This document shows positions 8,770 to 58,308 of a DNA stretch of 64,000 bases, one piece after another. The notes under the pieces were generated by a model. It had not been told where the DNA came from. It worked only from the letters and a program-made list of their open reading frames with translations, and did no database searches. How positions within the stretch are numbered: the first letter of the stretch is position 1; the number at the start of each line of letters is the position of its first letter. Location of the stretch: IMG/VR virus record IMGVR_UViG_3300028654_000001, positions 310,001 through 374,000 of that record; one strand, given 5' to 3'. Both the position numbers and the translations under genes were made by a program.

Positions 8770-9468
8770 TCAAGTAGTAAATCTCCACACCACCGTCATC
8801 GTACTAGTGGAGGGCTTATTTTGTACAGGAAAATTGAATACATTGCATAAAGTCTCAAACTGAGTCAAGTCCACCGTCGGGTCATAAGGGCCATTTGAAG
8901 GTGACACTGGGTTCTTGATCGACATGTCAGAGTTGATAGCCCCTCCAAGGATTCCCATCTCCACGAGAGGCCCGACAGCTTCTGATTCTGTGAAGGTGGT
9001 CGTGAAGTCCACTACATTGGTAGGAATCGAACTAGGATTCCCCAGAGAATCAACAAAGTTGGTAGAAGCGAACCTCTTGCGGGTGAGTTCAGCATAGAGT
9101 GCTCGTTGGGTTCTAGTTGGAGCTGGGGGGTGCATAGGATCCCACCCACTATCACCAGTCCCAACAGCCAAGGCAAAGGCTCCATTGAGCCCTGTTTCAC
9201 TGTTGTTTTTTAAGAGTCGGGCCACCAAAGTCGAGGCGTCAGCTGTAACCAGGTTCTTAAAGTTCCTAACACATTGAACTTTCCCGGTCCCCCCATCCCG
9301 AAGGGTCATGATCACATCACCACGTTTGATAGGTGAGATGTGCTCCTCATATTTTGCAGAGGTTAGCATACGAACTGCTGACTTGATCCGAGAGAACATA
9401 TCGATATTAGTCACCATTTGAGCACCAAAACTGCTTTCACAGACGTTAGGGAAGAACTGGTTAACCAA
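8770..9468 (-). CDS. Baseplate / tail-fibre attachment protein (tail-collar-fibre N-terminal-like fold)
   Basis: NLVT..A..LVARLL, ALAVGTG, TQRALYAELTRK, FTTTFTESEAVGPLVEMGI, KPSTSTMTVVWRF pattern of myophage baseplate proteins. Likely start is ATG 9417, overlapping the upstream stop. Confidence 0.75.
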   Translation of the reverse strand: MVNQFFPNVCESSFGAQMVTNIDMFSRIKSAVRMLTSAKYEEHISPIKRGDVIMTLRDGGTGKVQCVRNFKNLVTADASTLVARLLKNNSETGLNGAFALAVGTGDSGWDPMHPPAPTRTQRALYAELTRKRFASTNFVDSLGNPSSIPTNVVDFTTTFTESEAVGPLVEMGILGGAINSDMSIKNPVSPSNGPYDPTVDLTQFETLCNVFNFPVQNKPSTSTMTVVWRFTT

Positions 9469-12400: not shown

Positions 12401-13637
12401 AAAGGTAGGGCCTCCCAGTCAAAAGTGCCCTATTGTTACCGTTGTTAGATCTAAACTCTCTCGAGTTGAGCCTTCTGACTTCAACGGTTGGATCATACAT
12501 CCATTCATAATCGACTGCTATTGCACTCAAGTGAGCAGGTGGGACTGTCAACACAATCTGTCCCAAAAGCCCTATAACGAGGTCAACTGTAACCGGCACC
12601 CCATTGACCCGAACCACCACATCGTTGGGGTCGTCCGCTAGGAACCCAGTTCTAGGATCATAGAGAGTCCAAGTATTCAAAGGTGAGTTATTATTAGGAT
12701 CAGAACTGGGGGTCCTAAAACTCGCCTGAACTTGTAGTCTTGTAGCGCTAACCACCTTGAGAATCTTGTATGAGCCCCCGTTGATGGTTGACCCCTTCAA
12801 CTTCAAGTAGAGTCCCACGTGGCTCGAATCAAAGGCCCCACCAGGCAGGACAACCTCACCCATAGTCACTGCACCTAACAACTCTACGGGTGCCAAGTCA
12901 GCATGGTCAACAGCGGAGCTGGACTTCCTTCCCCTGACTACGGTGAACTCAGTGTCAGAAGTGGCTGTGACCGCCAAGTACTCTGAGTCGATCTTGAGAC
13001 TGTAGTTTATTGGATTTCCGTAGAACCCCAAGAGGCTCGACACTATTAGGTGGCTGTCTGTACTTGTGATAGATCCATTGAGGGTTGTTCGATATACAAT
13101 TCCGGAGAAATTGGAGGGGGCTGTCTGCACCGACCACTGACTACCCTTCTGTATTGTAAGTGGCGGCTTGACTATTGGCCCATTATCTGTGTAGATAGAC
13201 CTAGCCGAGTATGGGATTTGAGCTTGGAACCCTGCTACGGTGTCAAGTAGAGTATTCCCGTCAGTAGATTGGATAAGTGAGGATACTGTCAGGGTGTAAA
13301 CCCCTGTGATAAGTCCTGAAGTTGTGAGCGCTATGGTACTCTTGTCAACCATATACACATGGTTTACTGAGACAGATGACGGACCCGCTATATTGTAGGA
13401 CGCTGGATCGATCAAAACACTGTCTATTGACAGATCCTTATTGAAGTGTGCTATCAGGGTACCGTCAACAACTGTGAAGATTACCACAGTTACAGCAAAG
13501 TCCGAGGTGCTGCTAAGGTTTGCAAGGATTGATGAATCACCAGTGAGGTTTGCAGCTAGGTCCCCGCCTGAAAGCGTCCCTAATAGGATACTTCCAAGTG
13601 TGCTATCTAGTGTTCCTAAGCTAGAGGTGAAAGGCAT
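9411..13637 (-). CDS. Large baseplate wedge / fibre-like virion protein with repeated lectin (ConA-like) beta-sandwich domains
   Basis: 1408 aa, beta-rich, with repeated P..W...G / FDW...H.YR..K....V.LF.D modules. Directly follows the gpI-like wedge gene. Confidence 0.7.
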   Translation of the reverse strand: MPFTSSLGTLDSTLGSILLGTLSGGDLAANLTGDSSILANLSSTSDFAVTVVIFTVVDGTLIAHFNKDLSIDSVLIDPASYNIAGPSSVSVNHVYMVDKSTIALTTSGLITGVYTLTVSSLIQSTDGNTLLDTVAGFQAQIPYSARSIYTDNGPIVKPPLTIQKGSQWSVQTAPSNFSGIVYRTTLNGSITSTDSHLIVSSLLGFYGNPINYSLKIDSEYLAVTATSDTEFTVVRGRKSSSAVDHADLAPVELLGAVTMGEVVLPGGAFDSSHVGLYLKLKGSTINGGSYKILKVVSATRLQVQASFRTPSSDPNNNSPLNTWTLYDPRTGFLADDPNDVVVRVNGVPVTVDLVIGLLGQIVLTVPPAHLSAIAVDYEWMYDPTVEVRRLNSREFRSNNGNNRALLTGRPYLYSNVLQRSTGANNRILTDDIRAPLPQPLLRDVFYRAYERKYTASLNNPDLLRLNTPKNRIAYSSLTRKLSEVSVTYDGNILPESDPVAPWVRNGVGTASIVNGNLVVIDNTSGPYPTGQTLYWARGVDLSFKNVYAATWRMKIDATVPDGVFTGVSTGWSDNYRAVILGYLLEGGVRKIGFLKRGSGNTLSLIDSWTGGMGSSGNPTDLPVAFDWSIYHSYRFLKDISGTINLFVDGEAVESLQITEDQLPLLEELDATFNQVQNIFFGSLSREATNQSTWQFVRYLILPTDATQSAPFVDVSYGQPPPLTVLPEDFSKPWTPIGYHGNENLITIGPNVDLLLDSTSYTSSQSSLIGGDFRGFTRIEPLLGVSSSVVLDFGVSLRTYTHGITPNAVMAAIDDGKFLVQVCFFPTQAQPKVSYPGRSMPQDATPEPWTSLGGAHAYLIGRTLRIEDTSVSDGRLFSINDLAPTGSTSRIFDAPLDYLFEFHCGVISFVQDGTPEHFCGVTTDVFDGNRTIGVMLNEDGSGNPLVSFHSDGVLISFASFSFNWMDGKPHTYRVTKNTAGNLVVLFADNTLIGSTAYTSFSVATGTPTLSFGSTTQASVFQSKSVVDWYYVNGWRGQPLTATPPDYLPRHYVGIWKGSDPNSLLGYYLPTKSSGRANTNGNVLEDLTADFIADLVQSGNDLIIDDDINRGVYKIASVGSTSITIDDSVTPLPQTGSTVVRYRIPQETDWTTDHTYQILRDPTGFVGLFQDASSVPLIRVEYGHVTLPPSSVGLPSVINRGLPSVSWGAFDSTNLSQTAWDFVHYAITTSPIEVKIVPPHQVSNQRNVMASPEHLFGTLPHAHTQYSSASTGVPYQWEAYVNDPSVRAFTKLNEGTPLVPLTQTFKKSRTVTISVPPSGFGDSAFGSDSFGSGNLPLKTITIPASTGALYNNLEVIEKTSGESDLLSAFSDEVYIVMTPNPVSISAHLTGDSWLTSSSLTSVKAVLVLKW

Positions 13638-46501: not shown

Positions 46502-49500
46502 TCAAAGCTCCTCAGAGTAAATGGAGTCTACTGGATCAGCAGAGGATTCCTTAGCCACCTCTTGCGGCTCAACACCTGGTTTGGATACGTTCTCACCAGG
46601 TGCCAGACCTGCATCAAAAACAAAGGGGCTCATCCCTTTCGGACAGGTAATCTCAAGATTGACTGCTGCTCGAGTCAAGGCCACATAGGCTAGGTTGCGT
46701 TCAGCCTTCATCCGAGACGCTTCCTGAACTGGATCCGGAGGTGGATCATCGGGCTTAGGTTTTCTCTCCATTGGAAAGAGCCCTTTGGGCATGACCACTG
46801 CCACATTCTGCCACTGAGCCCCCTTTACCGAATTATGTACGATTGCCCCACCACTCACGTAATACTCGTGAGGTAGTACCCGAAGACTGAACACCTCTCC
46901 GTGATAGGGCTCTCTTTCAACCTGAAGAACACTCCAGCAAGGTTTGGTCCAAGCCTTCTTAGTCCCAACACCTGTAACGAACTCCGATGATACCACCGGA
47001 AGTTCCATGTAACCACTCAAGAGGTTACATGCTCTAATCAAGAATGCAACACTATAATTGTTCTTCTTCTCTGGACCAAGACCCCTAACATAGAGTGGGT
47101 ACTTGATATCAAGACCATACTCTCTGAGCAAGTTCAAAGCCCTTGGAGCAACGTAGGATTTGGTGCTCTCATGTATAGCATGAAGCTGACCCGAAGAAAG
47201 AATTCGTCCATTTCCTTTTGTATCCTGGTAGGCTTCGAAGGTCACCCCTGGGATCCCATAAATGCCTTGGATAAGGCATTCCATCTTCATGGCTTCCGCC
47301 TTTGTAGAAAACACACCTAAAATCCAACCTGCATCAGCTTTCTCTGTACCTAAACGACCACCAACCCCACCAGCCTTATAGGGGCGTGTAGCAGAAACAC
47401 AGTGTCCAACTCTCCACCAATCCCCACGACGCATTAGATACACAACGTATTTATTCATGAAGCTGTTCGATAGCTTCACCAACAAACGATGATTAGGGGT
47501 TACTCTTGTCGTACTACTATCAGTCACAACCTTGATAAGATCCCCACTATAAGGACGACTACCCCTAACAAAAGCATAACCTTCATGGTGGGTAGTTGTC
47601 TTACTCCTCGGCCCTCGTTTACCCGAACGACCCCAAAAAAGTTGGTTACACCCCTTCATATATGAAGCTAAGCGATGCTTAGACTGGTTTAACTCCCCTA
47701 TCGGAACCCAGCCATCGGTGGTTAGAATCAACTCATCAGGGGGTGAGCAATGAACCGTAGAGAGCGTGATAGCCGGAGGCTTTTCCTTCCTTAGTCCTGG
47801 AGGTAACTCCTGTTGCTTCTTCTCCCACTTGGCAGGATCTACTCTAAGGGTAGCCGCGAGCTTCGAGTACCTAGCCAGCTTTTTGATGTAGCCATGGGCT
47901 AAGGCTGGATCAGTTGCTTCTTTCTGGTCGTTCTCATTGGGATGAGCCAATGAGAACAGGAACTGGACAGCCCCAAGCCCCTTACCTTGATTAGACTTCT
48001 CTTTAACCTTAAGAAGCCCCTCCTCGCCTAACTCATTATGGACGTCAGTTTCCTTGTCATCCTCATCTTCTACGTCCTGTTCATCATCGGAATAGATAGC
48101 GGCATCCTCAGAGATTTGCTCTCGCAAAGTTGCGGTTGCAAAGGATTCTGTTCTGGTTGCGGAATCCCAACTCTTGACCGTTGAGCTGGTATTATCCAAG
48201 ATGTAATTGAGGAGCTCCTCCGTCGTGTGGTTACCCTCAATGTACTCCTGAAGGTCTCTGATACCAGGAGCTATCCCACGTAGGGCATCTGCTAGGTCAT
48301 CAACTATACGACCATAGGCATATTCTGCAGTACTTATACTCTTCCCCTTACGTACCATAGAATCTACGATGGCTGCCCTATAGGGCATCTTAAGACGGTC
48401 AGCCAATACTCGTACATAACGAGAGTCCAGCAAGATGTCAGGTCTGACATTCCTCACGTCTACCCTCTGCTTGCGAGCTACCTCATCAAGGGCTTCGTCT
48501 ACTGCTTTCTCTAGGTCACTGTGACTTAGGCGCACCCCACGATCAGGCTTGGTAAGAATAGAGATGAGAGAGTCCCTCATCTTCTCATAGTCATTCCCGG
48601 TTGCTAGATCAATGTACCCAAGTACCGCTTTGGATTCGGGTGCCTCAAGAAAACCCCTTCCACCTCTACGAATGTAGGGGATCTCATTGATGATGCAAGC
48701 TGTTTCGAAGTCGTTGAGTTCAGCATTAGTCCTAGCTAATACTGCGAAGTCCTCTGTAGCAGCTCCCTCGTCGATATCCTTTCGGTACCGCCCAATGGTG
48801 TCAATAGCAGCTTCAACATTGGAATCCGGAACATTCACTTGAATAGAAGCTTGGCCCGGACTCTTTCTCGGATCAGACTTAGAAGCTATCACCGTTCCGT
48901 CACTGTCACGCTCGATGAGTCTGTTGGCAGCTTCCACAATCTCAGGTTGGCACCGGTAGTTGGTTCGAATGGTGCGAAGAGTCCAACCCTCATCTAAGTT
49001 CTGGAATAGCTCTGGTTTGGCCCCACGGAACTGGTAGATTGCCTGTTTCTCATCACCAACCATCCAAATTGACTTGTCCTTGGAGTCTTGTGGAATATGC
49101 TCAGAGAGCATACCAAAGATCTGGTGCTGAACCGTATTGAGGTCTTGAGCTTCATCCACGAGGATATGATCGAACATACCCTGCATGACTTCCTTAGCCT
49201 TCGGATCACGTCTCAAGATGTCCCTCAGGATCTTGAGCATGTCATCCATATCCCCTAGGCGCTCCTTGCCCCTACGGTTCTTCGACATGAAACTCTCGTA
49301 CGGCTTGGATGGGTTACACGGGGGAAGCCAACCAGGGATATCCCCCTTAAGCCCTAAGTACATCTCGTACCAGATCACAGCCTGAGCTTCAGCTTGTGAG
49401 TTGACGGATGCCTTAGCCTGCTCGAGAGTCACATCATTCCCACGCCAAGCGTTGAGGAGTAACCCTGCCTTCTTTGCCTGAGGTGGATTCTCTACCCACT

Positions 49501-50914
49501 TCCTGGGGTACCCGTAGCGAGATACCAAAGCATCTGGACCACACTCCATCCACATATTTCGGATGGTTAATGAAAGGCTAGAAGGGTTGATGGTTTTCTG
49601 CTTACCCCAAGGAGGGGCTACTAATCTCGGAGGAGTAAGCATCGCTTTCTCCTCTGGGGTCCCAAACCCAGGCTTCCCAGTAGTACCGATTAGGTTCTTG
49701 AACAAGGCGTGCATAGTCCCAACCTGCACCCCAGTGGTACCAACCACACCACTGAGCTTGCCCTTGATCTTGTCCTCCAACTCAACTGCTGCCTTTTTGT
49801 TGAAAGAACAAGCCATGATTCGAGCAGGGTTGACCCTTCCGTCCTTCACTAGATACTCGATACGAGATACCAGGGTCGTCGACTTCCCACTACCGGCGCC
49901 AGCCGCTACTCGAACCCTTCCACCGGTGAGAGCTGCTGCCCTCTGCTCATCATCCAGATGCTGCAATGGTACTGGTATGTTTTGGAGAATATTTGGGTCA
50001 CTGATGGCAGCCACTGCAACCGCAGTGGCAATACCAACAACCTCGGACTGCTTTGGAGGCTCATCAGGTTTTTGATTAATATCAAGAGATTTCTTGGCCG
50101 CAGCGGTAGCATTTACCTGAACAGTAGCCAACATTGCCGATCGGGAGTCTTGGGTGATCTGAGTCTCTTGTGCTCCAACCGCAGCCGATTCCTTGATACT
50201 CGTAGTTGTGAGAGCTATGGAGTCTTGGATCTCATTAGAAGCACTGTCCACCGGCTCTGGAGCAAACTGACCTGACCCTGCCTGCTTAGCCGCATCATCA
50301 ATCCAGTCCCTCATCCGAATGTTCAACATCGGAATTGCAGCAAATATGTCGAGAGCCTTGTCTGCATCGTCCAACATGGAGGCGGCAATGGATTGCTTGA
50401 CCTGTCGAACGTACTTGGGGTTCTCCAAGATCCCCTTCACAGTTGCAGTACCCCCTCGAGTAAGGAGGGTCCTGAACTGCAAGGCCCTTCGAGCGGCTCC
50501 CGCTGGGTTGAAGGCTTTCAGGTTCAGAGCTCTCCGAAGCATTGCCTTCTGTGATGGTTTTTCTAAGTGACTCTCGAGGAAGTCCCCGTAAGCATCAAGT
50601 TGGGTATCCGCCATCCGAAGGATGTGAAGACCCTTCTTGATGAGAGCATCTTCGGTATTATCAACCCCAGAGGTCTCTTCTGCGTACCTCTCGTACGTAT
50701 CCAGAGCCAACAGGAAGATGATGTACTCGGCGACCTGAAACTCACCAACGGGCTCATCTTCACCATCAGCAGGCGGCGCAGCAGCTCTCACCGTTGAGGC
50801 TATCGGAACCAACAGAGGGTTATTCCGAGCCCTAGCAAACAAGTTGGCTTGGGCTGGGCTCTCATCAATAGTCTGGGTCATCAGATTCTCCGGATCTACG
50901 TAGATGGCTTTCAA
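46502..50914 (-). CDS. uvrD: UvrD/PcrA/Rep SF1 helicase with ~310-aa N-terminal extension and an intein
   Basis: Motifs VAAGAGSGKST, SFNKKAA, GTMHA, ILVDEAQD, VGDEKQAIYQFRGA, TNYRC, AVLARTN, STVH|SVKGAQW and ERNLAYVALTRA. Confidence 0.95.
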   Translation of the reverse strand: MKAIYVDPENLMTQTIDESPAQANLFARARNNPLLVPIASTVRAAAPPADGEDEPVGEFQVAEYIIFLLALDTYERYAEETSGVDNTEDALIKKGLHILRMADTQLDAYGDFLESHLEKPSQKAMLRRALNLKAFNPAGAARRALQFRTLLTRGGTATVKGILENPKYVRQVKQSIAASMLDDADKALDIFAAIPMLNIRMRDWIDDAAKQAGSGQFAPEPVDSASNEIQDSIALTTTSIKESAAVGAQETQITQDSRSAMLATVQVNATAAAKKSLDINQKPDEPPKQSEVVGIATAVAVAAISDPNILQNIPVPLQHLDDEQRAAALTGGRVRVAAGAGSGKSTTLVSRIEYLVKDGRVNPARIMACSFNKKAAVELEDKIKGKLSGVVGTTGVQVGTMHALFKNLIGTTGKPGFGTPEEKAMLTPPRLVAPPWGKQKTINPSSLSLTIRNMWMECGPDALVSRYGYPRKWVENPPQAKKAGLLLNAWRGNDVTLEQAKASVNSQAEAQAVIWYEMYLGLKGDIPGWLPPCNPSKPYESFMSKNRRGKERLGDMDDMLKILRDILRRDPKAKEVMQGMFDHILVDEAQDLNTVQHQIFGMLSEHIPQDSKDKSIWMVGDEKQAIYQFRGAKPELFQNLDEGWTLRTIRTNYRCQPEIVEAANRLIERDSDGTVIASKSDPRKSPGQASIQVNVPDSNVEAAIDTIGRYRKDIDEGAATEDFAVLARTNAELNDFETACIINEIPYIRRGGRGFLEAPESKAVLGYIDLATGNDYEKMRDSLISILTKPDRGVRLSHSDLEKAVDEALDEVARKQRVDVRNVRPDILLDSRYVRVLADRLKMPYRAAIVDSMVRKGKSISTAEYAYGRIVDDLADALRGIAPGIRDLQEYIEGNHTTEELLNYILDNTSSTVKSWDSATRTESFATATLREQISEDAAIYSDDEQDVEDEDDKETDVHNELGEEGLLKVKEKSNQGKGLGAVQFLFSLAHPNENDQKEATDPALAHGYIKKLARYSKLAATLRVDPAKWEKKQQELPPGLRKEKPPAITLSTVHCSPPDELILTTDGWVPIGELNQSKHRLASYMKGCNQLFWGRSGKRGPRSKTTTHHEGYAFVRGSRPYSGDLIKVVTDSSTTRVTPNHRLLVKLSNSFMNKYVVYLMRRGDWWRVGHCVSATRPYKAGGVGGRLGTEKADAGWILGVFSTKAEAMKMECLIQGIYGIPGVTFEAYQDTKGNGRILSSGQLHAIHESTKSYVAPRALNLLREYGLDIKYPLYVRGLGPEKKNNYSVAFLIRACNLLSGYMELPVVSSEFVTGVGTKKAWTKPCWSVLQVEREPYHGEVFSLRVLPHEYYVSGGAIVHNSVKGAQWQNVAVVMPKGLFPMERKPKPDDPPPDPVQEASRMKAERNLAYVALTRAAVNLEITCPKGMSPFVFDAGLAPGENVSKPGVEPQEVAKESSADPVDSIYSEEL
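46832..47749 (-). mobile_element. Intein (306 aa) in helicase motif V
   Basis: Begins CSPPDELILTTDGWVPIGEL, has block B TRVTPNHRLLV, ends VFSLRVLPHEYYVSGGAIVHN followed by Ser. Removal restores LSTVHSVKGAQW. Confidence 0.93.
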
Positions 50915-50931
50915 TAGAAAGGCAAACGGTT

Positions 50932-52842
50932 TTACTTACCGGGCTCCAAAAACCCCTCGTCAATCAACCTTCCTCGAATATATTCGGGGTCTGCATAGGG
51001 TTCGTCCTCCCGAACCAAGAAGTACCTGAGCACTGGGTCGGATTGAATCAGGTTCTCCTTGATCCTATCGCGCTCTTGGAGTGCGAAGAAGAGCTCCTCT
51101 CGTTTGATATACACCGATGGGAATACCCAATGTTGCCACCCATGAAATTCCACTATCAAGTTATGAGATGGGAAGTAACCGTCAAAACGAAAACGATGAC
51201 CTGATGGTGGGTTTACGAATCTCCAAGACTTCCACTCTTGTTCGAATGGTACGCCACCTAAAGCTTTTGACACCGCATCAAGACAGATAGTTTGACGAAT
51301 ACTATGACTAAATGTCTCCAAACCATGTCGTGTGCACTCGCGCTTTACAACCTTGTAGTCCTTCTTGAGTCCAACCATAGCGGAGGCTACAACTACTTTC
51401 CCATTCTTCAACCTAAAAGGTATTAAGTCTTCTTTTTCCAACCTAATGATCTGCCGCTCCACTCTAGCGTCTACATACTTAGTAGAGCTACGAAGTCCAA
51501 TAACATCCATGTATTTTCTCAAAGTTGGGTCACAAATATCGAGATCTTCTGCCATGGTCTTAAGATCCACAGCACCAACTTCATCAAGATACGGAGTAAA
51601 GTCAATCAAGGCTAGGTCCAACCTTGTTGCATCATTCGGAACCCCAGTTTTGATAAGTGAGAGCTTATTTGAGGTGCTTTGGAGACTAGGGTGATCCTCT
51701 TTAGTGAGACCCTTGCTCCATGAAGCCCGACCCTTCATGGCTTCTGCTGCATTAGCCACACGTACATCAGTCTCTTTGGTCAAACCACGATTCCATCCGG
51801 CACTAGCAGACATCTTAGCCTTCACCTCATCGGATAGTTTTCGCCCTCTAAGAGCTGAAGGACCGTGAACTTTAGAACTTAGAGCTATGAGTTTGAAGTT
51901 TGGGTGAATAGCCTCATACCGCCCGACTAGCTCTCGATGCTCACTGTTAACGTGAGAGGTTAGGTTCTCTGCTTGGTAACCGCAGACTTGACAAGTCACA
52001 TAATCTTCCGGTTCTGACTTACCATCCCATTTGGATAAGTCTGCTGCTTCAAGATCAGCTTGTTTACATTCTGGGCATCGAGAATCATGAGTAGAGTAGG
52101 CAAAAAATGCTGAAACTTCAATCTCTTGGTCACAACCTGAACATAATATGGTTTTCGTCTTCCCTTTTGTAGGGAATTTTTCATGAGATTCTCTCGCTGA
52201 CACCCCACGGAGTACTGTCAAAGCTTCAGAACGAATAAGGGCCTCTGGGAACTGCATCCTGTATTGACCAGCATTAATCTTATGTGCTGCCAACAAGTGG
52301 CGAGCTAGGGTTACTGACTTGTGTCCGCAAAGAAGGCAGGTCACGTAATCCTTACTTTCAATCTTCCCCTCCCAAGTCAGGTCCTCTTGAACTTGTAGGT
52401 ACTCCTGGTGATTCACATCAGCAACTTGAGCTAGATGCATTGAAAGTCCTTTTGAACCAGAACACCCAAGACCACACACCGGGCACTGACGGTCAACCCC
52501 TCGTTCTCTATCGGAACAGGTAGGGCAAGTAACTCTGCTTAGTCTAGACCTTGAAAGTATGGTTACTGAAGTAGGGGTACCACATTCCGCACAAGGTTCC
52601 ACTACCTCTTTCATCTTATGGGTTGACCCAGCCCTACTACGCCCACAAGCGACTGCTGCTGCTGATTGTAACTTATTCCCACGAGAATCAAAAGCTTCCT
52701 GCCCAAACTTTTCAACCCACCACTTTCGTAGAGTGTTGGGAGAGACCTCGAGACGTTTTGCTATTGCCTTGAAACCCTCAGTAGACTCAAACAGTGAGTA
52801 GGTATCTAAGGGGGTGGTAGAAGAGTGTTTACCAACGGGCAT
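50932..52842 (-). CDS. Free-standing homing endonuclease-like protein: HTH, multiple zinc fingers, NUMOD3-like repeats, C-terminal PD-(D/E)XK/Vsr-like nuclease
   Basis: Two DYVTC..CG.....L..H Ros/MucR-like fingers, WNRGLTKETD / WSKGLTKED repeats, and RFRFDGYFPSHNLIVEFHGWQHW...RDRIKE nuclease motif. Confidence 0.8.
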   Translation of the reverse strand: MPVGKHSSTTPLDTYSLFESTEGFKAIAKRLEVSPNTLRKWWVEKFGQEAFDSRGNKLQSAAAVACGRSRAGSTHKMKEVVEPCAECGTPTSVTILSRSRLSRVTCPTCSDRERGVDRQCPVCGLGCSGSKGLSMHLAQVADVNHQEYLQVQEDLTWEGKIESKDYVTCLLCGHKSVTLARHLLAAHKINAGQYRMQFPEALIRSEALTVLRGVSARESHEKFPTKGKTKTILCSGCDQEIEVSAFFAYSTHDSRCPECKQADLEAADLSKWDGKSEPEDYVTCQVCGYQAENLTSHVNSEHRELVGRYEAIHPNFKLIALSSKVHGPSALRGRKLSDEVKAKMSASAGWNRGLTKETDVRVANAAEAMKGRASWSKGLTKEDHPSLQSTSNKLSLIKTGVPNDATRLDLALIDFTPYLDEVGAVDLKTMAEDLDICDPTLRKYMDVIGLRSSTKYVDARVERQIIRLEKEDLIPFRLKNGKVVVASAMVGLKKDYKVVKRECTRHGLETFSHSIRQTICLDAVSKALGGVPFEQEWKSWRFVNPPSGHRFRFDGYFPSHNLIVEFHGWQHWVFPSVYIKREELFFALQERDRIKENLIQSDPVLRYFLVREDEPYADPEYIRGRLIDEGFLEPGK

Positions 52843-52846
52843 GACT

Positions 52847-52890
52847 AAACCTCACTTCGGTATGGATACCACCAAAGTGAGGTCTGTCAA
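52847..52890 (-). promoter_or_regulatory. TTGACA promoter plus RBS-sequestering hairpin upstream of the endonuclease gene
   Basis: Minus strand reads TTGACAgacctcactttggtggTATCCATaccgaagtGAGGtttagtcATG. acctcactttggt pairs with accgaagtgaggt (13 bp, one G-U) and covers the GAGG RBS. Confidence 0.65.
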
Positions 52891-52945
52891 TATTATGTCT
52901 TGAACTACCTTGTAAGTGCTTGAATCAATAAAGGTTTCTTGGGAC

Positions 52946-55900
52946 CTAGATCCTAGCTCTAAGGTTGAATGTTAAGACGATATAGAGCAAGGGAAAAATT
53001 GGAGCATAATATGCTACAGCATTCAATATCGTTGGATCATTAGGATCTACCGTAGCGGCGATACCGGTGAAGGCCGAGACGATCTCCTGCTGGATCAACT
53101 GCTTGAAGAGGGAGGTCATCGAGACCTCGACTTCATTGGTTCGACTCGACAGGAACTTGGTACCTACGTACGCGTCAAGGACTGACCTGGAACTGATCGA
53201 GACGTAGTCAGCGATCTGGGTTACCGTGGGCAACCGGGTCAGGATGTTCGTCATGTTGGTCGTGAGACCCTGACGGATCCGGATGATCGGCTGCAGATCT
53301 TCCAGGATTGTGATACCAGCCGTGGCCGTTTGATTGGCTTCGACCGGATCCATGATCCTGGGAATCTGGGTGAACCCTTGGAGCTGACGCCTCGTGTACG
53401 GGGTAGCAACATCCACAGCCGGGGAGCACACAGCACCGGCGACGGCCGCCGCGAAGAAGGTCCCATCCACCAGAGACTGGTAGGTGTTCCCGAGCTCGTC
53501 GGTGAAGGTGACTACTACCGAATCCGGGTAGAGAGCCACGATTCTCGAACTGAACAAGGACTTCGCAATGGTCTGAGCCACGGTGGGGGTTGTTCCACTG
53601 GCAAATCCGATCATACCCATCCGCTCACTCTGGTTGCGAATGTTTGACATGACTTCACAGTGCTGAGTCAGGTACGAGTACACTGCTGTATCCGTGCTGA
53701 GGGGCACAATGACGTCAGGCTTGACGTTACCGGGAAGAGGAGCAGCCAACCCTTGAATAGCCGTTATGAAGGACTGTGCAGAGGCCTGGTTCGTATTTGG
53801 AACCTTGAGAACCTGCTTGATCCCGACAAGAACAGCACCATTGAGGATGGCCAAGTAGGCACCCAGAGTAACCCTGTTCTCAGCATTGAGTGGGCCGTAA
53901 ACACCCTCAATAGTCTTGAACTGAGAGTACAGCTTCGTCGAGAAGTCCTGCTTCATGTAGTAGTAACTAATGAAGTAGAAATCCCCGTTGGCGGGCTCAA
54001 CCCCAGAAGGATTGAACGTCTCGATGTTAGCTGTGTCATTCACTCCAATCCCAACCGTATTGGCCACGATGGTCTCGAGGCCCGGAATTGAATAGAATGG
54101 CGCTCCTGGATTCACAGAGAATGTCTGTGAAGCAATCAGGGTGAAGTGGCCTGCACTGTCGTAGTGCCCAGTGGTAGACGGTAGAATCGTGAACCTAAGG
54201 CCTGTACGAGCATCCGTATAGGTCTGACCTGGGTACCCTATACCAGATGATCCATTGACCGTATCCGAAGAGGTAACCGCAAATTTGTCGGTGGCATCCT
54301 CACCATCGTCCCCAGAGATCCCAGGAACAATTCCAGTCCCAGTGAGGGTATTGAAGGCCGTAGAGGCTACGAACCCAATGCTGCTGGTGATGCCCGTCGT
54401 CAGGGACTCAATGGTGACATAAGTCTGGCCATTGAGGGTTGACGGATAGGCAACTGCACCAGTATCGAACCCAGATGTGCCCATGAGGGAGTCAACTACC
54501 TCTTGAGCCGATACCAAAGTCTGGCTCGCGAAAGATCCTTGGCTGAACCCAAGGAGGGTATTCGCTGTACCATCACCAATCAGAACTGCAGACTGAGTCT
54601 GATTGGTGTTACTTGTGATCCGGATCTTACCAGCATTTGCTAGAGTACCGTCAGTAGCCGAACCTTGTGAGGTTACTACGGCATTGATCTGTTTAGCAAT
54701 TACACTCGCTGACATTGACTCGATGTCAATCGAAATCGTACCATCGAAGGTAGCTGTTGGGATAATGCTCAACGAACCAGTGCTGGTAGCTGTAACCGAA
54801 ATCACAGTTGTGTCCGCTACCCCTGCAGTTGTGACACCACCAAAGACTACGTCAACTGTACCAGCTGTTGACGTGATGGTAATGGTAATGGTGTAGACTG
54901 CACTAATTATAGCAGCTAGTGGGTTAACCAAAGCTGCTACATTACCAACACCAGCCGTATGGGTGAAGGTATTGTAGGTTGTCGTCCAATTAGTCCCAGT
55001 GTACCCCGTGGTTGGTGTAATCCCATTAGAGAGGGTTGTTGTGAAGTCAACCCCATTGAGCCTCACCTGGAAGGTGTCATTCACACCGGCAACAACTGTA
55101 AAGGGTTCTGCAACTGCTCCCAAGATGGTTGCAGGCTTGTTGACGGATCCTGTAGTTCCAAGAGCCTGTTCAAAGGTCTTGAACCCAAGTAGGGTCTCTG
55201 CCGTGCCTTGAGCAACATAAACTGAGCTGACAGAATCAAACCCACCGGGAAGTGCCCCAGGGGTCGTGTTGCTCTTGATCAGGAAGAAGGTTGAGGTTCC
55301 GCCGAATGCCGGTATAGCTGTTGCAGTGGCGGGAGTGATAACACCACTAATAGCCGATGCAACTGTTGATGGGGTTCCTGATGTCAGGGTTACTGTATGA
55401 GCAACCCCATCAATCACTAGGTTCAGGACATCATCTACCCCAGTGGTGAATACAACATCACCGCCGGTGAGGACAACTGCCTGACTAACCAGAGTAGCAG
55501 GTCTTGTTGTAAGTAGATTGGTGCTTACCGGAGTACTATTGACATTGGTGATCCAAGTCGCTGAAGCTGAGTAGAACGAGTAAGGCTGGGCCCCTTCGTT
55601 CGTGTAGACAGCATTGCGTGCCGGAGCCTGACCAAAGGTCACTGTAACGGTCTCTGAAACTGGTGCCCCAGCTCCCGTGTAGAGTGCATCCGGGATATAT
55701 TCAACACCACGGGGCCACTGCACGATCTCTGAGAGTCCACCCTTGGTTCCGAATCGAACCTGGTATAGGTTCGTATTCAAGAGTGAGGAGAACACGGTGT
55801 ACTGCCCAACCCCTACCGGGCCGGCAACCGTATTGGTCAGGATATAGGTATCATCTTCGATTCGGTTGTAATAGAACGTCGCGTAGACATTCCAATCAGC

Positions 55901-57463
55901 CGGAATAGAATCCCTCAGAGTGATCTTTCGGTTTGAACCGTCAACTGCAACTACGGTAGCTGCTGGATGACCTAAGGCATCCGAGAGGGTTCGACCTACT
56001 CGAGCAATGACCAAGTCGGGACGGTTCGTGACCACATCTTGTCGGCTATTGGTAACTGACGAGAAGAGGGCAGAGCCCAAAGTCGTGTCTCTACCGTTAC
56101 CTGTGGTGGGGATCTCAGGCAATAGAAACACTGTGTTACTGATCACAGCTGGGATGACCGAAGTATCTGCAAACCTAGTGCAAGGTGCCAGATACATCTT
56201 GTTATCAACAAGAGTCGGAATGATCTGAGTGTTGTCGAAAGGGGTTGCACCAGGAGTCTGCAACGTAGAGGATACCGAATAACTGGTACCCCAGTGGACA
56301 ATCGAGACATCCGGAGTCGGGTTCTTAATGACGAAGTCCGCACCCTGAATGTAGTCGGAACGTCCAGGACTGATGCCTGCCCTGATGACACTAGTCACCA
56401 ACGGGTTTGGCAAATAGTCGAAAGTATCCTGCCAGGTATTCGCCCAATAGTTGATCGTAACAACGGCTCCTGGAGGAGGCGCGAGAGTCAAAGTTACAAT
56501 ACCGTTGGTACCATCCACAGCTGAGGGGATTACCTGGACGTTGTTCACCTTTACGACAACCTTTGAGGTGTCAGTTGTGGTGATACCACCAGAGGTTCCG
56601 TCGACGATCGGGCGTTGGAACACCCTGAACTGAGTGTTACCACTCACAAGCTGATTACTCGAGAGACCAAGAATGCCATTTGCATTTCCTGAACCGATCT
56701 GAATCGAGGAGACCGCTGTGAGCTGTAGGTGAGTTGCATTTTGATTGTCAGTGAATACTGATGCAACTCCAACACCCAAGGCTGCTGTGATCTGAGTCAC
56801 TAAGCTTGCAGTAGAAGCAGTGGGAGAAGCCTGGAATACAACTGTCCGTAGGGATCCACCATTGAGGGCTACCTGAAGGGTGTCATTCACACCAGTGATA
56901 ATGTTGAACGGTCCAAAACCAGGGGTGATGATCGTCTGAGGGGCCTCACTAACCTGATAGGACACATTATCCGTAAAGGCCGTGTCAGAACGGTGGAAGA
57001 AGTATGTTACCCGAACGGTGTCCGATGGCTGAGGTGGTACTTGAAGGGTTAGGATACCAGCAGAGCCATTGACGGACCCCACCGCGACAGGAGAGCCATT
57101 GACGGTAACGGTCACATTTCGAACATCGTTTGTGACTCGACCGAAGCCCTCACCATCAACTATCGGAGTGTTCCGAACTCTGAACTGAGTTCGGGTACCA
57201 TCCTGAGCACCCAAAATCGGGTTACTTGGATTTGTAGTGTCCACAATCCATTCAGCGGAAACGTCTTCATTGACGATCTGCTCGTCAAGAGTAGAGGAAG
57301 ATCCTCTAACCATCTCGAGGTCGCTTACCTGGAGTTGTTCTTGACCTACACCGATTATGAAGGGAATACGAATGCCAGCTACGAGGGCTGCAACGTTTGC
57401 ATCGGTTAGTGTGCGGGAGTAAACACCTGGTTGAACATATGTCGAAAATGGTCCCAAACTCAT
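52946..57463 (-). CDS. Tail sheath protein with multiple inserted domains
   Basis: N-terminal YVQPGVYSRT; C-terminal sheath core (HCEVMSNIRNQSERMG, AAAVAG, GITILE...IRIRQGLTT, YYAPIFPLLYIVLTFNL). Confidence 0.93.
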   Translation of the reverse strand: MSLGPFSTYVQPGVYSRTLTDANVAALVAGIRIPFIIGVGQEQLQVSDLEMVRGSSSTLDEQIVNEDVSAEWIVDTTNPSNPILGAQDGTRTQFRVRNTPIVDGEGFGRVTNDVRNVTVTVNGSPVAVGSVNGSAGILTLQVPPQPSDTVRVTYFFHRSDTAFTDNVSYQVSEAPQTIITPGFGPFNIITGVNDTLQVALNGGSLRTVVFQASPTASTASLVTQITAALGVGVASVFTDNQNATHLQLTAVSSIQIGSGNANGILGLSSNQLVSGNTQFRVFQRPIVDGTSGGITTTDTSKVVVKVNNVQVIPSAVDGTNGIVTLTLAPPPGAVVTINYWANTWQDTFDYLPNPLVTSVIRAGISPGRSDYIQGADFVIKNPTPDVSIVHWGTSYSVSSTLQTPGATPFDNTQIIPTLVDNKMYLAPCTRFADTSVIPAVISNTVFLLPEIPTTGNGRDTTLGSALFSSVTNSRQDVVTNRPDLVIARVGRTLSDALGHPAATVVAVDGSNRKITLRDSIPADWNVYATFYYNRIEDDTYILTNTVAGPVGVGQYTVFSSLLNTNLYQVRFGTKGGLSEIVQWPRGVEYIPDALYTGAGAPVSETVTVTFGQAPARNAVYTNEGAQPYSFYSASATWITNVNSTPVSTNLLTTRPATLVSQAVVLTGGDVVFTTGVDDVLNLVIDGVAHTVTLTSGTPSTVASAISGVITPATATAIPAFGGTSTFFLIKSNTTPGALPGGFDSVSSVYVAQGTAETLLGFKTFEQALGTTGSVNKPATILGAVAEPFTVVAGVNDTFQVRLNGVDFTTTLSNGITPTTGYTGTNWTTTYNTFTHTAGVGNVAALVNPLAAIISAVYTITITITSTAGTVDVVFGGVTTAGVADTTVISVTATSTGSLSIIPTATFDGTISIDIESMSASVIAKQINAVVTSQGSATDGTLANAGKIRITSNTNQTQSAVLIGDGTANTLLGFSQGSFASQTLVSAQEVVDSLMGTSGFDTGAVAYPSTLNGQTYVTIESLTTGITSSIGFVASTAFNTLTGTGIVPGISGDDGEDATDKFAVTSSDTVNGSSGIGYPGQTYTDARTGLRFTILPSTTGHYDSAGHFTLIASQTFSVNPGAPFYSIPGLETIVANTVGIGVNDTANIETFNPSGVEPANGDFYFISYYYMKQDFSTKLYSQFKTIEGVYGPLNAENRVTLGAYLAILNGAVLVGIKQVLKVPNTNQASAQSFITAIQGLAAPLPGNVKPDVIVPLSTDTAVYSYLTQHCEVMSNIRNQSERMGMIGFASGTTPTVAQTIAKSLFSSRIVALYPDSVVVTFTDELGNTYQSLVDGTFFAAAVAGAVCSPAVDVATPYTRRQLQGFTQIPRIMDPVEANQTATAGITILEDLQPIIRIRQGLTTNMTNILTRLPTVTQIADYVSISSRSVLDAYVGTKFLSSRTNEVEVSMTSLFKQLIQQEIVSAFTGIAATVDPNDPTILNAVAYYAPIFPLLYIVLTFNLRARI

Positions 57464-57561: not shown

Positions 57562-58308
57562 CTAGTCTGGGACTACACTAACACTACAGGGAGATAAGTG
57601 ATTTAGGTGGTACCACTTCTTAGAATTCACTCTAGCCTTCTGGCGTGACTCTTCCAAGTGTTCAGAACTCCATAACCAACGAGTTATCGTTTGACGTGGG
57701 ATTCCAAACTTCCTCTCAGCAGCATGAAAACCAATGATTTTAGCCTCTGAAGTAACAGTAGCTACTATACTATCTGTATACTTGCGCTTAGATTCACTAA
57801 GTTTTGCTCTAGACTCAGCAGACAATGTGCGATGAGTGCTGGCCAAGGAGATCTTGGTTCTGGTTTCATCAGACATAGCCATGCTCTTTCTTACAGAACT
57901 GACTTTAGCCCTGAGCCGAGCAGCAGAGGGATCATCCGATTGGTGCCAAGACTTGAGCTTATCGGATATCTTCTTTTTAGCAATATCAGAAGGGGTTAGG
58001 CCCCATGAACCCTCTCCACCAGAAGTCAGGTTATACCCAACTTCTCTATCTGTGGTGTCAAAAAACTGAATCAGGAACTTCTCAATCTCACAAGCTTTCT
58101 CCCAAGTTGAAACTGAGGTGATCTCGTGCCAAGTAAAACTCCCCGGGCCATACTTGCGGATAGCTCTATGAAGTCTGCAGTTAGAGGCACCTCGACTGGC
58201 ACTACTGATATGTCGACTCACCCGGCGTTTAAGATAATTTGAGGTGATCCCGAAGTAAAACTTCGCACTGGGATTGCACACTGCTATGTAGACCAAGATC
58301 TCAGGCAT
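57562..58308 (-). CDS. GIY-YIG homing endonuclease with NUMOD3 repeats and HTH
   Basis: LVYIAVCNPSAKFYFGIT...RRVSRH, LHRAIRKYG, EKFLI, GYNLTSGGEG; MSDETRTKIS / LSAESRAKLS; C-terminal AERKFGIPRQTITRW. Confidence 0.92.
   Translation of the reverse strand: MPEILVYIAVCNPSAKFYFGITSNYLKRRVSRHISSASRGASNCRLHRAIRKYGPGSFTWHEITSVSTWEKACEIEKFLIQFFDTTDREVGYNLTSGGEGSWGLTPSDIAKKKISDKLKSWHQSDDPSAARLRAKVSSVRKSMAMSDETRTKISLASTHRTLSAESRAKLSESKRKYTDSIVATVTSEAKIIGFHAAERKFGIPRQTITRWLWSSEHLEESRQKARVNSKKWYHLNHLSPCSVSVVPD

What the first reader, a model, noticed from the sequence alone, without database searches (positions are those of the whole stretch)
52946..53700. Abrupt GC switch in the last ~35 codons of the sheath gene next to the endonuclease
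Seen by hand count: line 53401-53460 is 42/60 GC and line 52981-53040 is 21/60 GC, with the change near 53050, yet the protein remains a normal sheath C-terminus. Inference: the downstream endonuclease arrived with a recoded, cleavage-resistant sheath 3' end (co-conversion tract), which would place its target site near 53000-53060.
Basis: partly seen in the sequence, partly recalled or inferred. Interest (0 to 1): 0.6.

Follow-up and report, generated by a model that had tools for sequence, protein, structure and literature searches.

The report
Homing-endonuclease footprint in phage sheath gene
The last ~36 codons of a giant phage's tail-sheath gene were rewritten with synonymous A/T-ending codons, and comparison with about 100 related phage contigs shows this rewriting goes with a selfish homing-endonuclease gene next door: a clear but ordinary example of a known mechanism.

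Summary
Third-codon-position GC (GC3) falls from 0.83 to 0.34 at window ~53051-53066. This is the largest GC3 step in the whole 64-kb window, and the protein stays a conserved sheath C-terminus.

The window is part of a 512-kb virus record. The downstream 636-aa ORF is a free-standing homing endonuclease gene (HEG): an HTH-like N-terminal module (N1), Ros/MucR-type zinc fingers and a Vsr-like nuclease domain.

In relatives where the UvrD helicase gene follows the sheath gene directly, the tail stays GC3-rich. Their codons for the Q-P-I-F-P-L-L-Y motif are nearly invariant in DNA. Relatives carrying an N1-type HEG have diverse A/T-ending synonymous codons exactly there (about 8 concordant and 0 discordant independent contrasts, p~0.008).

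One near-identical pair of relatives shows 0 differences in 6,140 bp, then 12 synonymous differences in the last 76 nt of the sheath gene, then the HEG cassette.

The co-conversion reading is therefore supported. The likely target is refined to ~52979-53033. Cleavage and resistance are untested. Two HEG-free relatives, including the window's nearest (L005), also carry recoded tails. Novelty: a new member of a known kind (T4 Seg/Mob/Hef-type intronless homing).

The parts
52946..57463 (-). Tail sheath gene (1505 aa). The conserved C-terminal ~350 codons are unusually GC3-rich (0.66-0.83).
   Evidence: ORF list. tblastn of the C-terminal 384 aa hits annotated tail sheaths in 224 phage records. 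GC3 profile.
52949..53057 (-). Synonymously recoded, A/T-ending tail of the sheath gene (last ~36 codons, GC3 0.33-0.34). Read as the endonuclease-linked co-conversion tract.
   Evidence: Change point and window-wide step statistic. This tail has the lowest GC3 of 64 unique relatives. Its composition matches the endonuclease gene.
52979..53014 (-). Core recoded block: the codons for A-Y-Y-A-P-I-F-P-L-L-Y-I. This is the predicted core of the endonuclease recognition or cleavage site. The window differs from the 'naive' 24-nt consensus at 10 of 24 positions.
   Evidence: The class difference in GC3 is greatest here: type A -0.33, type B -0.28, no endonuclease +0.07. The L053/L054 differences lie at -76..-13 nt from the stop and the L034/L036 differences at -64..-10.
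52842..52890 (-). Expression signals of the endonuclease cassette. They comprise a TTGACA (52885-52890), 16 nt, then TATCCA (52863-52868), and a 20-bp hairpin (52842-52889). The 3' arm of the hairpin holds the GAGG ribosome-binding site (52850-52853) and reaches the start codon.
   Evidence: RNA fold -32.5 kcal/mol, z = -3.4. The same layout with different stem sequences occurs in L012, L010, L004 and L013. The strict promoter scan did not call it.
50932..52842 (-). Free-standing homing endonuclease gene (636 aa, GC3 0.41). It has the N1 HTH-like module (~52618-52842), a zinc-ribbon and Ros/MucR C2H2 finger region (~51913-52593, with one finger at 52249-52380), and a Vsr-like nuclease domain (50935-51309).
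   Evidence: Pfam ROS_MUCR E = 2.2e-9. PDB 2jsp (Ros) E = 3.5e-6. The nuclease model has pLDDT 91.9 and matches Vsr 1cw0_A at Z 9.2 and I-Bth0305I 3r3p_B at Z 8.8. Invariant residues are E536, D554, E565, H571, D592, K595. It is single-copy in the 512-kb record.
46502..50914 (-). UvrD-type helicase gene, the conserved right-hand neighbour. In endonuclease-free relatives it follows the sheath gene within ~70-250 nt. It carries an intein-like insert at 46829-47749.
   Evidence: Pfam UvrD-helicase E = 9e-40. Synteny table. Junction alignment. Intein coordinates.

Best explanation
The 636-aa ORF downstream of the sheath gene is a free-standing homing endonuclease gene (HEG) that spreads between related giant phages by 'intronless homing'. 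During co-infection the enzyme would cut the HEG-less allele in the very conserved 3' end of the sheath gene. The inferred site is the codons for the (Q/A)-P-I-F-P-L-L-Y motif, about 35-65 nt before the stop. The break would then be repaired from the HEG-bearing genome. Repair copies the HEG cassette (~1.9-2.4 kb, inserted ~100 nt downstream of the sheath stop) together with the adjoining sheath 3' end. That co-converted sheath end encodes the same protein with different, mostly A/T-ending synonymous codons. This would make the HEG-bearing genome a poor substrate for its own enzyme. The abrupt GC3 drop at ~53057 is the left edge of that tract in this phage. What is shown: the composition step, the nuclease fold, the association across relatives, and the block-wise joint replacement of tail and HEG in relatives. 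What is inferred: that the enzyme is active, that it cuts inside the recoded block, and that the recoding protects.
For: (1) The GC3 step is the largest in the window, it is purely synonymous, and the tail GC3 (0.34) matches the HEG (0.41; N-terminal part 0.37-0.39), not the sheath C-terminal domain (0.73). (2) The sheath-UvrD gap is empty in some relatives and holds related HEGs of 40-93% identity in others. The HEG type changes at least 20 times on the sheath tree. (3) In HEG-free loci the eight motif codons are nearly invariant in DNA even at ~70% protein identity. In loci with N1-type HEGs, 4-7 of the 8 third positions are A/T, using varied codons. GC3 of this block relative to each locus's own baseline is +0.07 with no HEG, -0.33 for type A and -0.28 for type B. 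(4) Independent contrasts give about 8 concordant, 0 discordant and 1 tie, p ~0.008. Thirteen further HEG-free metagenome loci all have the naive site. (5) L053 (no HEG) and L054 (HEG) have 0 differences in 6,140 bp upstream. They then have 12 synonymous differences within the last 76 nt of the sheath gene. Then 60 nt in L053 is replaced by 2,382 nt in L054. After that, 644 bp are identical starting from the next gene's ATG. L034 and L036 have 15 differences, all within -64..-10. L034 and L054 differ by 115 nt in the sheath body but by 0 in the last 68 nt, and their HEGs are identical. (6) The nuclease domain has a Vsr / I-Bth0305I-like fold with a conserved acidic and histidine set. (7) HEG fragments occur in L018, L026, L040, L041 and L066, all with recoded sites, which is the expected decay stage. 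(8) The published precedent is that polymorphisms in the host allele spare the HEG-bearing genome (mobE, PMC2790892), and that free-standing HEGs cut outside their insertion site and co-convert the flanks (PMC2988022).
Against: No cleavage data exist. No near-identical HEG-free partner of the window itself was found in either collection; its closest relatives L002-L004 all carry the HEG. L005, the nearest HEG-free relative, and L022 have recoded tails without any HEG remnant. Type C HEGs, which lack the N1 module, sit at the same place mostly with a naive motif. So either they cut elsewhere or HEG presence alone does not require this recoding. HEG-bearing loci tend to have lower overall GC, which is a confounder removed only by within-locus baselines and matched pairs. 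The tree used for the contrasts was a quick search with many weak branches. Contigs from four other samples show only the same allele, with no HEG-less form.
Confidence: 0.75

Rival explanations
1. Passenger-only tract. The sheath tail is co-converted donor DNA that travels with the HEG, but the cleavage site lies elsewhere. Candidates are the short intergenic hairpin region that the cassette replaces, or the start of the next gene. In that case the synonymous changes play no part in self-protection.
For: In L053/L054 the 60-nt intergenic segment is replaced outright, so an intergenic target would be destroyed by insertion. Endonuclease-free loci keep a homologous hairpin before UvrD. The tail's composition resembles the HEG's, as expected for hitch-hiking donor DNA.
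Against: In type B pairs the 10 codons nearest the cassette differ at only one position, while the next block (-64..-31) differs at every codon. A donor of generally lower GC would differ in both blocks. Recoded alleles use many different codons across lineages. The intergenic region is poorly conserved among relatives and so is a poor homing target, whereas the motif DNA is nearly invariant.
Confidence: 0.14
2. Ordinary modular recombination. The sheath/UvrD junction is simply a recombination breakpoint between phage modules of different GC content, and the endonuclease gene is incidental cargo.
For: The gap also holds unrelated cargo: an ART-PolyVal protein, a methyltransferase/glycosyltransferase and a DnaJ protein. 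L005 has a very different UvrD joined to a window-like sheath.
Against: Loci with unrelated cargo mostly keep the naive, GC3-rich tail. The breakpoint lies inside the gene, 64-105 nt before the stop, and is tied specifically to N1-type HEGs.
Confidence: 0.06
3. Expression constraint. The A/T-rich tail is selected as a promoter, UP element or unstructured RNA needed to express the downstream endonuclease or to end sheath translation.
For: A promoter-like pair of hexamers and a hairpin that sequesters the ribosome-binding site lie 55-105 nt downstream of the stop.
Against: Type C endonuclease loci also have the HEG gene directly downstream of the sheath stop, yet they keep a GC-rich motif (L064 versus L065, L036 versus L034). 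The recoded block is 90-170 nt upstream of the -35-like hexamer, beyond the reach of a UP element.
Confidence: 0.03
4. Chance or local mutation bias. The tail is a random low-GC3 patch.
For: A 35-codon window with GC3 of 0.34 or less occurs in 11% of windows in this genome.
Against: This is the largest step among 16,442 positions. It recurs at the same codons in independent lineages. Pairs show 0 differences elsewhere over kilobases.
Confidence: 0.02

Closest known systems
T4-type free-standing homing endonucleases and 'intronless homing' (SegG/gene 32, SegF/gene 56, MobE/nrdB; reviewed in PMC2988022, PMC2790892)
   Same: It is a stand-alone endonuclease ORF wedged between conserved essential genes. 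The inferred cut is in a neighbouring conserved gene, not at the insertion point. Flanking DNA is co-converted. The host allele differs by nucleotide polymorphisms. An RNA hairpin covers the ribosome-binding site.
   Different: The nuclease class differs: Vsr-like here, GIY-YIG or HNH there. The host is an uncultured 512-kb phage and the target gene is the tail sheath. Nothing has been tested biochemically. The tract seen here is short (~65-105 nt on the sheath side).
EDxHD / Vsr-like homing endonucleases: I-Bth0305I (PDB 3R3P) and the free-standing Hef of T4-like phage U5 (PMC3239194)
   Same: The predicted nuclease fold matches (Z 8.8 to 3r3p_B, Z 9.2 to Vsr 1cw0_A). The conserved residues have spacing parallel to Vsr (E536, D554, H567, H571, D592 against Vsr E25, D51, H64, H69, D97). 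It is phage-borne, and Hef is also free-standing.
   Different: There is no detectable sequence similarity to either. The DNA-binding part is an HTH-like N1 module plus Ros/MucR-type C2H2 fingers and zinc ribbons, not NUMOD repeats. The protein is 2-3 times longer.
HEG islands and domain shuffling in vibriophage ICP1 and other phages (Barth et al. 2023, PMC10448857)
   Same: HEGs cluster next to essential structural and replication genes and mark boundaries of genetic exchange. Here a GIY-YIG HEG lies upstream of the sheath gene, this HEG lies downstream, and UvrD carries an intein. Relatives show modular swapping of DNA-binding and nuclease parts (types A, B and C).
   Different: The HEG families differ (T5orf172 and IPA-HNH there). 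Here the exchanged segment can be resolved to single codons.
F-CphI / psbA in cyanophage S-PM2 (PMC6083498)
   Same: It is a free-standing phage HEG placed directly downstream of the conserved gene it targets.
   Different: It has an Endo VII-type catalytic motif, and its target is a host-derived photosynthesis gene.

Membership tests
Free-standing homing endonuclease gene (intronless homing) | Independent ORF between conserved genes, not inside an intron or intein | tested here: met
   The ORF 50932-52842 has its own start, ribosome-binding site and stop, and lies between the sheath and UvrD genes.
Free-standing homing endonuclease gene (intronless homing) | Patchy presence or absence at one locus among close relatives | tested here: met
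   The gap is empty in L006-8, L011, L014, L021, L032, L042 and others. It is occupied in L002-4, L009/10, L012, L013, L019 and others. There are at least 20 state changes on the tree.
Free-standing homing endonuclease gene (intronless homing) | Co-conversion of flanking host DNA together with the gene | tested here: met
   This is shown in relatives: L053/L054, L034/L036 and L034/L054. For the window itself it is inferred from composition and from the family pattern.
Free-standing homing endonuclease gene (intronless homing) | Site-specific cleavage of the endonuclease-less allele, and resistance of its own allele | not testable with these tools
   This needs an enzyme assay. There is only indirect support, from the recoding pattern.
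EDxHD / Vsr-like nuclease family | Vsr-type variant of the PD-(D/E)XK fold | tested here: met
   The model has pLDDT 91.9. VIA-align gives Vsr 1cw0_A at Z 9.2 (rmsd 3.2, 109 aligned) and I-Bth0305I 3r3p_B at Z 8.8 (rmsd 2.9, 95 of 98). Foldseek's top hit is 1vsr with probability 0.98.
EDxHD / Vsr-like nuclease family | Composite catalytic residues E...D...H...D | tested here: inconclusive
   E536, D554, H571 and D592 are invariant in 19 sequences. The spacings D-to-H of 13 and 17 resemble Vsr's 13 and 18. No residue-level superposition was available.
EDxHD / Vsr-like nuclease family | Detectable sequence homology and NUMOD-type DNA-binding repeats | tested here: not met
   There is no Pfam or PDB sequence match for the nuclease domain. 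The N-terminal part is an HTH-like module plus Ros/MucR fingers.
HNH endonuclease (the name attached to the best PHROG) | HNH (beta-beta-alpha-metal) catalytic motif | tested here: not met
   There is only a weak phrog_559 hit (E = 3.7e-6, 50 residues). The same region folds as a Vsr-like domain.
Contractile tail sheath protein | Homology to characterised or annotated sheath proteins | tested here: met
   tblastn of the C-terminal 384 aa gives 224 phage records, all annotated as tail sheath where annotated. Pfam, PHROG and NCBIfam sheath models do not match.

The most novel reading that the evidence does not exclude
Soil and freshwater giant phages may carry a modular family of Vsr-like homing endonucleases in which the N-terminal DNA-binding module sets the target. 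N1-bearing types (A and B) go with recoding of the P-I-F-P-L-L-Y codons. N1-less type C goes with changes in the last ~10 codons. Different family members replace each other at one hotspot. This would drive an arms race visible as purely synonymous diversification of the sheath's most conserved motif. Such a series would be a natural experiment for reading a protein-DNA recognition code.
Probability: 0.3. Interest if true: 0.55.

Novelty: new member of a known kind. Interest (0 to 1): 0.4.

Why it matters
The finding shows, codon by codon and from raw metagenome contigs alone, the footprint that a selfish endonuclease leaves in an essential structural gene of an uncultured 512-kb phage. It predicts a target site of about 35-55 bp that can be tested directly. 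It adds an undescribed architecture to the short list of Vsr-like homing endonucleases: an HTH-like module, Ros/MucR zinc fingers and a Vsr-like nuclease. It also shows that abrupt synonymous composition steps at gene ends can flag homing sites in unannotated sequence. The mechanism itself is textbook, so the result illustrates known biology rather than overturning it.

Tried and rejected
- blastn of the region against GenBank phages found no match.
- Pfam, PHROG and NCBIfam do not name the sheath. They name only a zinc finger in the endonuclease.
- A profile search of the nuclease domain against PDB sequences found nothing significant. Only the fold search worked.
- The N1 module fold search gave only weak HTH-like matches (Z up to 4.6). 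I do not claim a fold for it.
- The metagenome scan found no closer relative of the window than L002-L004, so there is no clean endonuclease-free partner for this phage.
- Contigs laid from four other rhizosphere runs show the same sequence with 0 differences in the endonuclease and tail. No joints skip the endonuclease. This is uninformative about mobility.
- RNAalifold on ten upstream regions gave no consensus structure because the regions align poorly, so the hairpin covariation was judged only by eye.
- The strict sigma-70 scan did not call the TTGACA/TATCCA pair.
- The whole-tail threshold (GC3 drop of 0.10 or more) was not significant in independent contrasts (p ~0.4). Only the motif-level score was significant.
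- I looked for a low-GC donor whose tail matches the window's. None was found, and the best non-clade identity was 75%.
- Tail similarity tracks endonuclease similarity after controlling for the sheath body (permutation p = 0.003). This is driven largely by one pair.
- The large protein searches were not used, because the fold search and the loci settled the questions.
Full report
**Context.** The window is bases 310001-374000 of a 512,571-bp virus record with direct terminal repeats, that is, a giant phage genome assembled from a metagenome. The finding lies at the 3' end of a 1505-aa ORF on the minus strand (52946..57463). No Pfam, PHROG or NCBIfam sheath model matches this ORF. However, its C-terminal 384 residues hit 224 phage records by tblastn, and every annotated hit is a tail sheath (Bacillus phage G, Tunturiibacter phage Tunturi_5, Myrna-like mycobacteriophages). 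Three other genes lie on the same strand:
- a GIY-YIG endonuclease gene upstream (57562..58308);
- a 636-aa ORF downstream (50932..52842);
- a UvrD-type helicase gene further downstream (46502..50914) with an intein-like insert.

**The observation.**
- Both hand counts are exact.
- The change is in third codon positions only. GC3 (G+C at third codon positions) is 0.83 in codons 1436-1470 and 0.34 in codons 1471-1505. GC1 and GC2 hardly move.
- A likelihood change point places the switch 33-39 codons before the stop, at window 53048-53066, best 53057.
- Among 16,442 adjacent pairs of 35-codon windows in 31 ORFs of the window, the seven largest GC3 steps all lie here.
- The tail value is ordinary for this genome (mean 0.49, sd 0.11). 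The sheath C-terminal domain is the outlier: only 0.13% of windows reach 0.83.
- The tail matches the composition of the downstream ORF (GC3 0.41; 0.37-0.39 in its first 330 codons).
- The encoded peptide is a normal, highly conserved sheath C-terminus.

**The downstream ORF.**
- Pfam sees only a Ros/MucR C2H2 zinc finger (E = 2.2e-9) and a weak HTH.
- A 19-sequence alignment of relatives (A1) shows three things: an N-terminal module of ~75-110 residues that I call N1; several Cys/His clusters, including two Ros-like fingers (PDB 2jsp, E = 3.5e-6); and a C-terminal domain with invariant E536, D554, E565, H571, D592 and K595.
- The C-terminal domain was modelled with pLDDT 91.9.
- The best structural matches are a RAP domain (Z 9.4), the Vsr endonuclease (1cw0_A, Z 9.2, rmsd 3.2 over 109 residues), the catalytic domain of the homing endonuclease I-Bth0305I (3r3p_B, Z 8.8, 95 of 98 residues) and a DUF559-like protein (Z 7.8).
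- The spacing of D554, H567, H571 and D592 parallels Vsr D51, H64, H69 and D97, which are the residues described for the EDxHD family (PMC3239194).
- There is no sequence-level match to these proteins.
- The N1 model gives only weak HTH-like matches (Z up to 4.6).
- The gene occurs once in the 512-kb record.

**Relatives.** A scan of viral contigs returned 79 loci whose sheath C-terminus is 61-98% identical to the window's. A metagenome scan added 50 loci, many of them duplicates.

The interval between sheath and UvrD varies:
- In some loci UvrD follows the sheath gene within ~70-250 nt.
- In others a relative of the 636-aa ORF sits between them.
- Others hold unrelated cargo.

The endonucleases are modular:
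- Type A has N1, fingers, a middle region and the nuclease. It is found in the window, L002-4, L009/10, L012, L013, L019/20, L065, L069 and L078.
- Type B has N1, fingers, the nuclease and a ~340-aa extension.
- Type C lacks N1.
- Fragments of 32-250 aa occur in L018, L026, L039, L040, L041 and L066.

Junction alignment puts the insertion point after an intergenic hairpin ~60-110 nt downstream of the sheath stop and just upstream of the UvrD leader.

- In loci where UvrD follows directly (10 unique), tail GC3 minus upstream GC3 is 0.00. In endonuclease-bearing loci (33 unique) it is -0.145 (Mann-Whitney p = 3e-5, not corrected for relatedness).
- The class difference peaks at codons -20 to -11 from the stop.
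- A map of third positions shows a run of A/T exactly over the codons of the invariant P-I-F-P-L-L-Y motif in endonuclease-bearing loci. The same columns are solidly G/C in endonuclease-free loci.
- In endonuclease-free phages, even at ~70% protein identity, these eight codons read almost invariably CAG CCG ATC TTC CCG CTG CTG TAC.
- N1-type loci carry 6-11 differences from that 24-mer, using varied codons. The window has 10.
- GC3 of the 12-codon block relative to each locus's own baseline is +0.07 (no endonuclease), -0.03 (type C), -0.33 (type A) and -0.28 (type B). Type C instead shows a modest deficit in the last ten codons (-0.16).
- On a tree built from the sheath without its last 40 residues, independent contrasts between N1-type endonuclease and recoded motif give about 8 concordant, 0 discordant and 1 tie (sign test p ~0.008). 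For type C versus none there is no signal.
- Thirteen new, non-duplicate endonuclease-free metagenome loci all have 0-2 A/T third positions in the motif.

**Block-wise replacement.**
- L053 (no endonuclease) and L054 (type B) are identical over 6,140 bp upstream.
  - They then differ at 12 positions, all synonymous, between -76 and -13 nt from the sheath stop.
  - Next, 60 nt in L053 is replaced by 2,382 nt in L054.
  - After that they are identical for 644 bp starting at the next gene's ATG.
- L034 (type B) and L036 (type C) differ at 15 positions, all between -64 and -10, and at none in the 1,088 nt upstream.
- L034 and L054 differ at 115 positions in the sheath body but at none in the last 68 nt, and their endonucleases are identical.

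So the recoded tail moves with the endonuclease gene as one unit into different backgrounds. This is what co-conversion predicts. In these pairs the ten codons nearest the cassette are almost unchanged, while every codon of the next block differs. This argues that the block itself, and not merely donor composition, is what distinguishes the endonuclease-linked allele.

**The window's own lineage.** Its closest relatives (L002, L003, L004; 95-98% sheath identity) all carry type A endonucleases, 91-93% identical in two cases and 45% in the third. Their tails differ from the window's about twice as often per site as their sheath bodies do, and almost all of these differences are synonymous.

The nearest endonuclease-free relative, L005 (89%), has UvrD directly downstream. 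Yet its tail is also partly recoded (GC3 0.51 against 0.70 upstream), and it shares the clade's Gln-to-Ala change in the motif. L022 behaves likewise. I found no endonuclease remnant in either.

I read these two as loss footprints or resistant alleles, consistent with the fragments seen elsewhere. No endonuclease-less form appears in contigs of four other samples that hold this phage.

[quoted passage not shown] In that system the cut is in a conserved neighbouring gene at a distance from the insertion point, repair is from the endonuclease-bearing genome, flanks are co-converted, and polymorphisms spare the carrier (PMC2988022; PMC2790892). Vsr-like homing endonucleases are known both in an intron (I-Bth0305I) and free-standing (Hef) (PMC3239194). 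Clustering of such genes around essential phage genes, and their domain shuffling, have also been described (PMC10448857).

Three things are new here: the target gene, the host (an uncultured giant phage lineage), and the architecture with Ros/MucR fingers. My own knowledge, not tested here, is that the C-terminal arm of sheath proteins takes part in the inter-subunit 'handshake'. That would explain the extreme conservation that makes this motif a good homing target.

**Verdict.** This is a new member of a known kind and is of moderate interest.

Noticed in passing
window 52842-52890 (- strand): A 20-bp hairpin (-32.5 kcal/mol, z = -3.4) spans a TTGACA, 16 nt and a TATCCA. It buries the GAGG ribosome-binding site of the endonuclease up to its ATG. 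The same layout with different stem sequences occurs in L012, L010, L004 and L013, and endonuclease-free loci keep a homologous hairpin before UvrD. It resembles the ribosome-binding-site sequestration and internal late promoter of T4 I-TevI and segB.
   Followed up: partly
window 46829-47749 (- strand), inside UvrD 46502-50914: An intein-like insert of 307 residues (it starts C-S-P-P-D-E and ends V-H-N, followed by S) interrupts the helicase. Its GC3 is 0.43 against 0.53 in the N-terminal flanking part (N-extein). L005's UvrD has a weak Hint match at a different position.
   Followed up: partly
window 57562-58308 (- strand): A GIY-YIG homing endonuclease gene (phrog_314, E = 6e-29) lies immediately upstream of the sheath gene, so the sheath is bracketed by two selfish nuclease genes. 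L040, L056 and L079 also have a GIY-YIG gene upstream. The first 35 sheath codons have GC3 0.37 against 0.46 for the next 105.
   Followed up: no
window 53058-54000 (sheath C-terminal domain): The conserved C-terminal ~350 codons of the sheath have GC3 of 0.66-0.83 in a genome whose mean is 0.49. The same excess is seen in relatives of every GC content. It could be codon selection in a highly expressed gene or gene flow from GC-richer relatives. It remains unexplained.
   Followed up: partly
L054:7253-9514, L038:1960-4167, L043, L046, L058: Type B endonucleases carry a ~340-residue C-terminal extension after the nuclease domain, with a weak N6_N4 DNA-methylase match (E = 1.3e-3).
   Followed up: no
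L018, L026, L040, L041, L066 (within ~100-600 nt after the sheath stop): Short remnants of the endonuclease (32-56 residues, up to 89% identical to intact copies) lie next to recoded sheath tails. L041 holds remnants of two different types. This looks like the decay stage of the homing cycle.
   Followed up: yes
L037:7275-9368, L080:7376-9163, L018:5291-6343: The sheath-UvrD gap is a general cargo hotspot. It holds an ART-PolyVal ADP-ribosyltransferase-domain protein, a methyltransferase/glycosyltransferase/TPR protein, and a DnaJ-domain protein in different relatives.
   Followed up: no
L030 vs L027, L064/L075, L048 (last ~13 sheath codons): Loci with N1-less type C endonucleases keep the naive P-I-F-P-L-L-Y codons but show extra synonymous changes in the last ~10-13 codons. 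This hints at a different, adjacent target for this subtype.
   Followed up: partly
window 46504-50914 near codon 884; ORF 9413-13637 near codon 295: These are the next-largest GC3 steps in the window (0.46). I did not examine them.
   Followed up: no
window 50800-53400: Contigs of four other rhizosphere metagenome runs carry this stretch with no differences in the endonuclease gene and the sheath tail. Weaker shares occur in landfill, soil, groundwater and freshwater runs.
   Followed up: partly
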